Of a stretch of DNA of 64,000 nucleotides, positions 2,654 to 12,588 are shown one piece after another. The position numbers were made by a program, and so were the translations under genes. Within the stretch, counting starts at the first letter, position 1; each line of letters begins with the position of its first letter. The notes beneath the pieces were generated by a model. The model was given only the letters and a program-made list of their open reading frames with translations, did no database searches and had not been told where the DNA came from. The stretch lies in the sequence record MT133560.1, one strand, 5' to 3'.

Positions 2654-2728
2654 TTTCTATTTTCCTATTTTGGTAATACTAAGTTAAACAACGATATGAT
2701 ACTTTACTAATCGTCAATGGAGTTTAAT

Positions 2729-11492
<8,764 letters not shown>

Positions 11493-11550: not shown

Positions 11551-11856
11551 ATGTCTCTACTTAAAAAGATCGGTCTAGCTTTAATTGGATCAGAAGGACG
11601 TAAGGAAGTTTTTGAACAAGAATTAACTAAACTATCAAATTCTAATGCAGTTATTGATCAAATGGTGATTAATTTACTGGGTAGTAAGAAGAAGTTAGAT
11701 GACTTCCTAATTAAAGCTGAAGAAATTGATAATAAGAAACTAGGCTTCATTAAAAATCGAGCCGAACTTATTAAACTAGTCAAATCTAAATATTCACAAG
11801 ACCCTCGGGTTGCCGATGTAGTAGTGTCACTTTACATTGGTGGTTTCATTTATTGA
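11551..11856 (+). CDS. Hypothetical protein
   Basis: 101 aa ORF with AGGT RBS. Confidence 0.75.
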   Translation: MSLLKKIGLALIGSEGRKEVFEQELTKLSNSNAVIDQMVINLLGSKKKLDDFLIKAEEIDNKKLGFIKNRAELIKLVKSKYSQDPRVADVVVSLYIGGFIY

Positions 11857-11863
11857 GGTAAGT

Positions 11864-12556
11864 ATGTCTAAACCTAATCTTGAGTGGTTAGCTTCCTTAG
11901 AAAGTAAAGAAGCTAAAAGTACAGTAGATTCTTCCGATATGGATAATGATCAAAAGGAAGGTAGCGATAAGTCTCAACAAGATGAAGCTACTGAACCTGA
12001 GAAGAAAATTACTGCAACTGATGTACAAATTGCAATTGAAGAATATGCGCGTATCCGTGCATTAACCACTACTAAAGATCTTCCAACTGACCCTGAACCA
12101 GGTGATACTTATCATGTAAATGGGGTAGATTGGATTTATCAAGAAGATGGTGGATGGGTAACTATGCAAGGTATTTATGGCCATGAACATTTTGATGAAA
12201 ATGGTCTAAATATTGAAGCAAGTGGTATTGATCAGAAATCAGGTGCAACTAAACGTTATGTGGTAACTGGTTATAATGCTCAGACTAACCCAGCTGCTAT
12301 GCCTGGTGATAATCTGACTGAATGTGTTATCCTAATGCAGAATGGACTTGTTCCAGAAGTTGGTGTAAATGGCCTAACTGCTGACTGTCTACTTAAAATC
12401 GTTAAAGATTTATTTGAAGGTTATCAAGCAGGCCCATTTGCATGTGAAGAGAATCAGGTAGTGATTAATTCAATGGACCGTGCTCTTAGTGCAATTCATC
12501 AACGCCTCGTAAGACGTAAAGAACAAGGTACTGAAGGTACCTATAGTGGTAATTGA
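11864..12556 (+). CDS. tad1: Tad1-family anti-defence nucleotide-signal sponge with N-terminal extension
   Basis: C-terminal MQNG..GVNG..CLLKIVKDLFEGYQAGPFACEEN..ALSAIHQRLVRRKEQGTEGT matches the Tad1 pattern FQKG..GV..LLEIVRDRL..FQAGPF.SREN..AL.W...R...R..R.V.GT; GAGGT RBS before ATG 11864. Confidence 0.8.
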   Translation: MSKPNLEWLASLESKEAKSTVDSSDMDNDQKEGSDKSQQDEATEPEKKITATDVQIAIEEYARIRALTTTKDLPTDPEPGDTYHVNGVDWIYQEDGGWVTMQGIYGHEHFDENGLNIEASGIDQKSGATKRYVVTGYNAQTNPAAMPGDNLTECVILMQNGLVPEVGVNGLTADCLLKIVKDLFEGYQAGPFACEENQVVINSMDRALSAIHQRLVRRKEQGTEGTYSGN

Positions 12557-12563
12557 CATAAAT

Positions 12564-12588
12564 GCCTCCCTTCGGGGAGGCTTTATTT
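12564..12588 (+). terminator. UUCG-loop intrinsic terminator
   Basis: gcctccc-ttcg-gggaggc-tttattt. Confidence 0.85.

What the first reader, a model, noticed from the sequence alone, without database searches (positions are those of the whole stretch)
11864..12556. Tad1-like immune-signal sponge with a ~130-aa N-terminal extension, next to late tail genes
Seen: the C-terminal ~95 aa carry the Tad1 pattern (QxG, GV/GL, LLxIVxD, QAGPFxxxEN, terminal R..R...GT). Established: Tad1 proteins sequester Thoeris gcADPR and some CBASS cyclic oligonucleotides. Unusual here: an acidic disordered N-terminus plus a small LPTDPEPGDTYHVNGVDWIYQEDGGW module of the type seen on virion proteins, and a position downstream of gp181/gp182-like genes. 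Inference: possibly a virion-packaged or localised sponge.
Basis: partly seen in the sequence, partly recalled or inferred. Interest (0 to 1): 0.7.

Follow-up and report, generated by a model that had tools for sequence, protein, structure and literature searches.

The report
phiKZ gp184: capsid-packaged Tad1 sponge

Summary
The ORF at 11864-12556 (+, 230 aa) is real. The window is a phiKZ-type genome, and the ORF has the exact coordinates of PHIKZ184. Its protein is 100% identical to PDB 8Y6V chain I, "gp184".

The C-terminal ~118 aa (113-230) form a Tad1 domain:
- sequence match to solved Tad1 chains at E 2e-6, improving to 1.5e-25 with a family profile;
- an AlphaFold model with pLDDT above 93;
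- Foldseek top 20 hits all Tad1.

The gcADPR/dinucleotide pocket residues are kept. The arginine/threonine pair that binds cyclic trinucleotides in the solved Tad1 proteins is replaced, by E195 and N202.

The N-terminal 112 aa hold three parts: a conserved short peptide ending in a head-protease motif, an acidic disordered stretch, and a ~49-aa beta module. That module matches the 34 residues resolved in the capsid. It recurs on internal-head proteins of PhiPA3-like phages, always bracketed by protease motifs.

The literature already calls gp184 the phiKZ Tad1. It is described as a non-essential minor capsid protein of the inner vertex complex, cut by protease gp175, and injected. The added details are modest.

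The parts
11855..11858 (+). Shine-Dalgarno GAGG, 5 nt before the ATG; it overlaps the stop codon of gp183
   Evidence: Read directly from the sequence.
11864..12556 (+). Gene PHIKZ184 (gp184), 230 aa plus stop
Evidence: ORF list. 100% identical to PDB 8y6v_I 'gp184'.
11864..11902 (+). aa 1-13: conserved N-terminal peptide with a predicted short helix (7-13), ending in S-L-E, a gp175-type protease motif
   Evidence: Helix in the AF2 model. A [SAG]-x-E aligned at aa 11-13 in 18 of 20 close relatives. Motif specificity S/A/G-X-E from PMC5694885. A role as a head-targeting or propeptide signal is inferred.
11903..12040 (+). aa 14-59: acidic, predicted disordered stretch with further [SAG]-x-E sites (glutamate before the cut, P1, at E16, E44, E59)
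   Evidence: pLDDT 41-55. Charge count and motif list.
12041..12187 (+). aa 60-108: small beta module, the probable capsid anchor, bracketed by A-I-E (P1 E59) and G-H-E (P1 E108)
   Evidence: Four short strands, pLDDT 83-90. The 34 residues resolved in 8y6v_I fit the model at rmsd 1.4 Å. The same module occurs in PhiPA3 gp096 and in 881/896-aa internal head proteins, with aligned flanking motifs in 9 of 10 sequences on each side. That the 34 resolved residues lie in this module is inferred.
12188..12553 (+). aa 109-230: Tad1-type sponge domain. Pocket residues are Y187, N197, R214, R218, with a C-terminal G-T-E-G-T lid. The cyclic-trinucleotide (CTN) site positions are E195 and N202.
   Evidence: phmmer and profile hits to Tad1 chains. 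pLDDT above 93. Foldseek top 20 hits all Tad1. Residue mapping from the ungapped HMMER alignment onto residues named in bioRxiv 10.1101/2023.11.15.567273. Column counts.
12564..12588 (+). Intrinsic-terminator-like hairpin (7 pairs, 6 G-C) followed by a T-run, 8 nt after the stop
   Evidence: 3 terminator-like sites in the region against 0.6 expected.

Best explanation
gp184 is the Tad1 sponge of phage phiKZ, made as a precursor that is built into the head.

Shown here or published:
- The C-terminal 118-122 aa fold as a Tad1 domain with the conserved pocket that sequesters Thoeris gcADPR and some CBASS cyclic dinucleotides.
- The protein sits on the inner face of the capsid vertices, is a substrate of the head protease gp175, is injected into the cell, and is dispensable in the laboratory.

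Inferred:
- The conserved N-terminal peptide and acidic stretch act as a propeptide.
- The ~49-aa beta module (aa 60-108) is the piece wedged between gp86 and the first hexamer.
- Cutting after E108 frees a 122-aa Tad1 domain inside the head.
- That domain enters the cell with the DNA and binds the first immune signal molecules before any phage gene is expressed.
- From its sequence, this Tad1 probably does not bind cyclic trinucleotides in the way the solved Tad1 proteins do.
For: Identity with phiKZ gp184 and PDB 8Y6V chain I.

Tad1 homology: E 2e-6 for the single sequence and 1.5e-25 for the profile, covering residues 7-124 of a 125-residue chain.

Fold: pLDDT above 93 for aa 113-230; Foldseek top 20 hits are all Tad1, probability 1.0, TMt 0.68-0.76.

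Pocket: CbTad1 F82/N92/R109/R113 correspond to Y187/N197/R214/R218. In 160 relatives N197 is kept in 160, R214 in 159, R218 in 157, and position 187 is F, Y, W or H in 157.

Capsid location, proteolysis, injection and dispensability come from PMC11297242, PMC10449902, bioRxiv 10.1101/2025.11.23.690004 and PMC13282480.

Module: it is shared with PhiPA3 gp096 (virion protein) and with 881/896-aa internal head proteins, and is bracketed by aligned [SAG]-x-E motifs. The protease specificity S/A/G-X-E is from PMC5694885.

In PhiPA3 the syntenic Tad1 homologue gp217 lacks the module and is not annotated as a virion protein, whereas the module-bearing gp096 is.

Synteny of gp181, gp182, Tad1 and thymidylate kinase is kept in relatives only 44-59% identical.
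Against: Local Pfam and NCBIfam scans give no hit for this protein. Only a precomputed 'weak' PF24729 mark exists for relatives.

The paper that reported the phiKZ Tad1 activity (Li et al., Nature 2024) is not held, so its data were seen only through citing papers.

The verified gp175 cut site(s) in gp184 could not be read. The capsid paper says the modelled part is shorter than the cleavage product, so a cut after E108 is not proven and the Tad1 domain could stay tethered.

The CTN-binding pair and the hexamer-interface residues of CbTad1/CmTad1 are not kept.

Only about 55-60 resolved copies per head are implied by five complexes per vertex. By my own arithmetic that is roughly 0.1 µM in a 1-fL cell, a small buffering dose.
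Confidence: 0.88

Rival explanations
1. Tethered sponge. gp175 cuts only in the N-terminal part (for example after E44 or E59). The mature protein keeps the module and the Tad1 domain in one chain, so the Tad1 domain hangs flexibly from the capsid wall. It is either not released or leaves only when the whole vertex complex is ejected.
For: The capsid paper states that the modelled part of gp184 is shorter than the cleavage product, 'likely due to flexibility'. The linker aa 103-111 has low pLDDT. G at P3 is the rarer option in the S/A/G-X-E specificity: eight of the known phiKZ sites are A-X-E.
Against: The G-x-E right after the module is aligned in 9 of 10 module-bearing proteins whatever the cargo. 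The Tn-seq preprint describes the C-terminus as liberated by the head protease. Injection of gp184 was shown by western blot.
Confidence: 0.2
2. Mainly a structural cement protein. The Tad1-like domain is a relic or has been re-used for head assembly, with no sponge role in infection.
For: It fills a gap between gp86 and one capsomer subunit in the vertex complex. No Pfam or NCBIfam hit.
Against: All pocket residues are kept under strong family-wide conservation. The gene is dispensable at 37 °C, which would be odd for a needed cement. Citing papers report anti-CBASS and anti-Thoeris activity. The related phage Goslar builds the vertex complex without it.
Confidence: 0.04
3. The sponge acts only as newly made protein late in infection. 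Its presence in the head is a side effect of being made together with head proteins.
For: The gene lies in a block of late structural genes and has its own terminator. The packaged dose is small, about 55-60 resolved copies.
Against: A dedicated, conserved anchor module with flanking protease motifs is shared with true internal head proteins. A conserved N-terminal protease motif is present in 18 of 20 relatives. Injection has been demonstrated.
Confidence: 0.08

Closest known systems
Tad1 (Thoeris anti-defense 1): CbTad1, CmTad1, SBSphiJ7 Tad1; PDB 7UAV/7UAW/8SMD/8KBB-8KBH
   Same: Same fold: an N-terminal antiparallel sheet followed by two C-terminal helices. The same gcADPR/dinucleotide pocket residues and the same C-terminal lid motif. 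The size of the predicted freed fragment (122 aa) equals that of stand-alone Tad1 proteins.
   Different: It is encoded with a 112-aa N-terminal extension and built into the virion. The cyclic-trinucleotide pair (CbTad1 R90/T97) is E195/N202 here. The hexamer-interface residues of CmTad1 are replaced. Identity to the solved proteins is only 20-28%.
phiKZ processed head and ejection proteins (gp93, gp162, gp86 and the inner-body family)
   Same: Head-internal, cut by gp175 at S/A/G-X-E, partly woven into the capsid wall, and injected. The anchor module of gp184 occurs on internal head proteins of PhiPA3-like phages.
   Different: The cargo here is a small sponge domain of known biochemical type, not an alpha-helical inner-body domain.
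T4 internal protein IPI* (from my own knowledge, not tested here)
   Same: An anti-defence protein made with a short N-terminal head-targeting peptide, trimmed by the prohead protease after a glutamate, and injected with the DNA to act before phage genes are expressed.
   Different: IPI* blocks a restriction enzyme by binding the protein rather than sequestering a small signal molecule. There is no sequence or fold relation.
Acb2 (anti-CBASS 2)
   Same: A phage sponge for cyclic nucleotides. It shares the short 'Acb2/Tad1 hairpin' Pfam region PF24729, marked 'weak' on relatives.
   Different: No Acb2 chain appears among the PDB sequence hits at E up to 10, nor among the 21 Foldseek matches with E up to 1e-3. 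All significant matches are Tad1.

Membership tests
Tad1 (Thoeris anti-defense 1) | Significant sequence homology to experimentally characterised Tad1 proteins over the whole domain | tested here: met
   phmmer gives E 2e-6 to 4e-6, aligning aa 117-226 to residues 17-122 of a 125-residue chain. The family profile gives E 1.5e-25, covering chain residues 7-124.
Tad1 (Thoeris anti-defense 1) | Fold: N-terminal antiparallel beta sheet followed by two long C-terminal helices | tested here: met
   The AF2 model has strands 116-122, 129-135 and 153-158 and helices 173-189 and 195-220, with pLDDT above 93. Foldseek top 20 hits are all Tad1, TMt 0.68-0.76, probability 1.0.
Tad1 (Thoeris anti-defense 1) | gcADPR/cyclic-dinucleotide pocket residues (CbTad1 F82, N92, R109, R113) | tested here: met
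   They correspond to Y187, N197, R214 and R218 through the ungapped alignment. N197 is kept in 160/160, R214 in 159/160 and R218 in 157/160 relatives.
Tad1 (Thoeris anti-defense 1) | C-terminal lid that closes over the ligand (CbTad1 residues 116-122) | tested here: met
   The aligned segment 221-227 carries G-T-E-G-T. E224 is kept in 59/69, G225 in 62/69 and T226 in 50/69 relatives.
Tad1 (Thoeris anti-defense 1) | Cyclic-trinucleotide site (CbTad1 R90/T97; CmTad1 R88/T95). This is a property of the solved members, not of the whole family. | tested here: not met
   gp184 has E195 and N202 at these positions. R with T/S and W210 co-occur in only 15 of 160 relatives, and 71 have an acidic residue at 195.
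Tad1 (Thoeris anti-defense 1) | Hexamer (trimer of dimers) through CmTad1 K96, Q98, E99, M102, W103, K106 | tested here: inconclusive
   The aligned residues are S203, D205, R206, S209, A210 and Q213, so they are not kept. The oligomeric state cannot be predicted with the single-chain tool.
Tad1 (Thoeris anti-defense 1) | Binds gcADPR and relieves Thoeris (and some CBASS) defence | not testable with these tools
   Reported for phiKZ gp184/Tad1 only through citing papers. The primary paper is not held.
phiKZ head proteins processed by gp175 and ejected | Present in the virion head | tested here: met
   Identical to chain I of the capsid structure 8Y6V. Located in the vertex-binding complex.
phiKZ head proteins processed by gp175 and ejected | S/A/G-X-E protease motifs at domain borders | tested here: met
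   Seven sites, with P1 at E13, E16, E44, E59, E108, E195 and E224. The sites at E13, E59 and E108 are aligned in relatives. Actual use of each site was not seen here.
phiKZ head proteins processed by gp175 and ejected | Delivered into the host cell | not testable with these tools
   Published western-blot evidence (PMC10449902).
Acb2 | Sequence or fold match to solved Acb2 structures | tested here: not met
   No Acb2 chain among the PDB sequence hits or the significant Foldseek hits.

The most novel reading that the evidence does not exclude
The ~49-aa beta module, bracketed by two head-protease motifs, may be a portable 'dock-and-release' cassette. phiKZ-like phages would have moved it between cargo proteins: Tad1 in the phiKZ lineage, large internal head proteins in PhiPA3-like phages. 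Elsewhere, fragments related to the major capsid protein may do the same job for Tad1 domains.

Separately, the Tad1 proteins of this phage group would form a subgroup that keeps the gcADPR/dinucleotide pocket but has lost, or never had, the cyclic-trinucleotide site and the classical hexamer. That would explain why phiKZ still triggers a cA3-dependent CBASS nuclease.
Probability: 0.4. Interest if true: 0.45.

Novelty: already known. Interest (0 to 1): 0.22.

Why it matters
A sponge that arrives pre-made with the DNA can blunt signal-based immunity (Thoeris, CBASS) before the phage expresses any gene. That makes gp184 a useful model for how large phages load anti-defence cargo into the head. 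The concept is already in the literature for this exact protein, so the finding adds no new biology.

Three sequence-level details may help people working on phiKZ:
- the missing trinucleotide site;
- the protease-bracketed anchor module shared with other cargo proteins;
- the module-less Tad1 of PhiPA3.

Tried and rejected
**Family scans.** Local Pfam and NCBIfam scans of the whole protein and of the C-terminal domain gave no family. PF24729 is in the local library, because it hit P0058, but gp184 stays below its filters.

**Papers not held.**
- Li et al., Nature 2024 (PMC12159963).
- Thomas et al. 2012 (PMC3323674).
- Thomas and Black 2013 (PMC3719823).
- The supplement of the capsid paper.

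Because of this, the verified cut sites in gp184, the residue numbers of 8Y6V chain I and the ligand spectrum measured for phiKZ Tad1 remain unread. The 2023 preprint of Li et al. does not mention phiKZ. A phrase search for 'phiKZ Tad1' found nothing.

**Protease motif across the wider family.** I tested whether a protease motif before the domain is general among N-terminally extended relatives. It occurred in 45 of 74, against 37.1 expected from shuffles, so there is no clear enrichment. The claim is therefore limited to phiKZ-like proteins.

**Neighbours.** gp182, gp183 and gp185-187 have no Pfam family and only PHROGs of unknown function.

**Acb2.** Considered and rejected, since no such hits appeared.

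**Gene call.** A chance ORF or mis-called start was rejected: there is a Shine-Dalgarno, a terminator, an identical PDB entry, and the same coordinates in the phiKZ record.

Full report
**1. What is there**

An ATG ORF runs from 11864 to 12556 on the + strand and encodes 230 aa. A GAGG sits 5 nt upstream of the ATG. A 7-pair G+C-rich hairpin with a T-run starts 8 nt after the stop.

The surrounding 1.9 kb is 100% identical to Pseudomonas phage fnug and 99.8% identical to phiKZ. The phiKZ reference record annotates PHIKZ181, 182, 183 and 184 at exactly the window offsets.

So the 'gp181/gp182-like genes' of the finding are gp181 and gp182 themselves, and the ORF is gp184.

**2. The Tad1 claim**

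- phmmer against all PDB chains returns an identical 230-aa chain (8Y6V chain I, 'gp184'). After that come only Tad1 chains (8KBB, 8KBE, 8KBG, 8KBH, 7UAV), at E 2e-6 to 4e-6 over aa 117-226.
- A profile built from 69 relatives raises this to E 1.5e-25 and covers residues 7-124 of a 125-residue Tad1 chain.
- An AlphaFold2 model built on that alignment has pLDDT above 93 for aa 113-230. It shows three strands and two long helices.
- Foldseek against the PDB gives Tad1 structures as the top 20 hits, with probability 1.0 and TMt 0.68-0.76. Against viral models it finds 'Acb2/Tad1 hairpin domain' proteins.
- An exhaustive HMMER search finds 1910 relatives at E up to 1e-3.
- tblastn finds the domain in 180 phage records, including SBSphiJ7, where it is annotated Tad1.

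The domain is about 118 aa rather than 95, and the extension about 112 aa rather than 130.

**3. Binding sites**

The helix region aligns without gaps to CbTad1 and CmTad1. I checked the numbering against the residues named in the Li et al. preprint.

- The pocket for gcADPR and cyclic dinucleotides (CbTad1 F82, N92, R109, R113) corresponds to Y187, N197, R214 and R218.
- In an alignment of 160 domains, N197 is kept in 160, R214 in 159 and R218 in 157. Position 187 is F, Y, W or H in 157.
- The C-terminal lid is kept as well.
- The pair that holds the phosphates of cyclic trinucleotides, and also helps form the hexamer (CbTad1 R90/T97, CmTad1 R88/T95), is E195/N202 in gp184.
- The other CmTad1 hexamer contacts are also replaced.
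- Across the 160 domains, R at 195, T/S at 202 and W at 210 travel together in 15 sequences. Seventy-one sequences, including all close relatives of gp184, have an acidic residue at 195.

My inference is that gp184 belongs to a subgroup that keeps the gcADPR/dinucleotide pocket but not the trinucleotide site. One published observation fits this. A cA3-dependent CBASS nuclease is still activated by phiKZ infection, and Acb2, a cA3 sponge, rescues the sensitive nlp1 mutant. I could not read the paper that measured phiKZ Tad1 directly, so this remains inference.

**4. The N-terminal extension**

The model shows four segments before the Tad1 domain:
- a short helix at aa 7-13;
- a disordered acidic stretch, with aa 1-62 at net charge -9;
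- a small four-strand module at about aa 63-102, pLDDT 83-90;
- a low-confidence linker at aa 103-111.

The Foldseek hit to 8Y6V chain I shows that only 34 residues of gp184 are resolved in the capsid, and that they fit my model at 1.4 Å. The capsid paper describes that piece as mainly beta strands, inserted between gp86 and the centre of the hexamer next to the vertex.

I infer that the 34 residues are the module, for three reasons. A compact Tad1 domain would be seen whole or not at all. The Tn-seq preprint says the N-terminus is wedged in the capsid. The module recurs on other head proteins, as follows.
- tblastn with aa 55-112 finds it in PhiPA3 gp096, a 321-aa virion structural protein.
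- It also occurs near the N-terminus of 881-896-aa 'internal head proteins' of PS119XW-like phages, encoded inside the inner-body gene block.

**5. Protease motifs**

The phiKZ head protease gp175 cuts after glutamate in S/A/G-X-E (PMC5694885). gp184 has seven such sites. Three of them are conserved in alignment:
- S-L-E at aa 11-13, present in 18 of 20 close relatives, including those without the module;
- A-I-E ending at E59;
- G-H-E ending at E108.

The last two bracket the module and are aligned in 9 of 10 module-bearing proteins, whatever follows the module. A cut after E108 would free H109-N230, which is 122 aa, the size of a stand-alone Tad1.

Which sites are actually used could not be checked. 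The capsid paper's remark that the modelled part is shorter than the cleavage product leaves room for a tethered form. I keep that as the main rival.

**6. Relatives and context**

The gene order gp181-like (about 2300 aa with a lytic transglycosylase trace), gp182-like, small ORFs, Tad1 homologue, then thymidylate kinase is kept in metagenomic relatives at 44-59% identity and in PhiPA3. The gene is therefore an old resident of this phage group, not a recent pick-up.

Only the phiKZ lineage and a few relatives (P0001-P0004, P0020, P0022) have the module on the Tad1 protein. The roughly 200-aa forms and PhiPA3 gp217 (189 aa) keep the N-terminal peptide and the acidic stretch but lack the module. 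In PhiPA3, gp217 is annotated 'hypothetical protein' while the module-bearing gp096 is annotated 'virion structural protein'. This agrees with the module being the capsid-docking part, but it rests on one comparison and on annotation only.

**7. What is already known**

- The capsid cryo-EM paper names gp184 as a minor capsid protein of the inner vertex-binding complex. It reports five complexes per vertex and notes that gp184 is cut by gp175 (PMC11297242).
- A proteomics paper found gp184 to be an inner-body interactor and validated its injection (PMC10449902).
- AntiDefenseFinder reports Tad1 as the only known anti-defence gene in phiKZ (PMC11724313).
- The phage Tn-seq preprint calls the gene orf184/tad1. 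It finds the gene non-essential and states the model outright: N-terminus wedged into the capsid, C-terminus freed by the head protease and injected in the next infection.
- A 2026 review repeats that Tad1 is injected by phiKZ and blocks CBASS and Thoeris (PMC13282480).

**8. Mechanism and its limits**

The most likely course is as follows.
1. The precursor is made late and enters the prohead.
2. gp175 trims it.
3. The module stays in the vertex complex.
4. The Tad1 domain lies free in the head, or associated with the inner body.
5. It is expelled with the DNA and binds early gcADPR or dinucleotide signals.

The first two steps and the injection are published. The assignment of the module, the cut after E108 and the ligand range are inferred.

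Five complexes at 11-12 vertices give about 55-60 resolved copies. By my arithmetic that is about 0.1 µM of binding sites in a 1-fL cell. The packaged dose can therefore buffer only the first molecules, unless further unresolved copies travel with the inner body.

**9. Verdict**

Interest is low for the finding as such. The small additions are the missing trinucleotide site, the protease-bracketed portable module, and the contrast with PhiPA3.

Noticed in passing
P0082 (L009:465-1832) and P0107 (L008:1067-2107): Two distant relatives carry an N-terminal stretch matching Pfam PF25620 PhiKZ_MCP (E 2e-9 and 2.5e-20; profile positions 135-368 and 147-229 of 635), followed by a C-terminal Tad1-like domain. 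This may be a second, independent way of tying a Tad1 sponge to a phiKZ-type capsid. The contigs are short (2.8 and 8.1 kb), so the context is unclear.
   Followed up: partly
L007:3273-3842 (PhiPA3 gp217) and L001:3461-4426 (PhiPA3 gp096): In PhiPA3 the syntenic Tad1 homologue (189 aa) lacks the beta module and is annotated 'hypothetical'. The module sits in the middle (aa 181-235) of gp096, a 321-aa virion structural protein in the inner-body gene block.
   Followed up: partly
L003:9902-11023: In a metagenomic phiKZ-like contig, a 373-aa gene with a weak PhiKZ_MCP (PF25620) mark lies 1.3 kb downstream of the Tad1 homologue. phiKZ has no Pfam-recognisable counterpart at that place: gp185-187 give no hit.
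   Followed up: no
window 2717-9442: The mechanical ORF for gp181 starts at 2717 (2241 aa), while the phiKZ record annotates the start 12 nt later, at 2729. This is a minor ambiguity in the start codon.
   Followed up: no
window 11864-12553 against the local Pfam copy: The precomputed tables mark relatives with PF24729 (Acb2_Tad1_hairpin, 'weak'). A direct hmmscan of gp184, its C-terminal domain, P0003, P0012 and P0029 returns nothing for that family even at E up to 10. The 58-position model is too short to recognise this branch reliably.
   Followed up: yes
160-sequence alignment of Tad1-like domains (script): R at position 195, T/S at 202 and W at 210 (gp184 numbering) co-occur in 15 of 160 sequences, against under 1 expected if they were independent. 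This suggests a distinct trinucleotide-binding, hexamer-type subgroup within the family. Relatedness of the sequences was not controlled for.
   Followed up: partly
66 Tad1-domain relatives P0001-P0166 with more than 20 aa before the domain and no shared anchor module (all 93 such proteins minus 7 gp184 relatives, P0001-P0004, P0020-P0022, and the module-less P0005-P0019, P0025, P0026, P0066, P0152, P0162); no window coordinates: Ninety-three of 165 fetched Tad1-domain relatives have more than 20 aa before the domain; 7 share gp184's anchor module and 20 more share only its lead-in without the module. Of the other 66 extensions, Pfam-scanned 10 of the longest: two hit PhiKZ_MCP, eight got no N-terminal hit.
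   Followed up: partly
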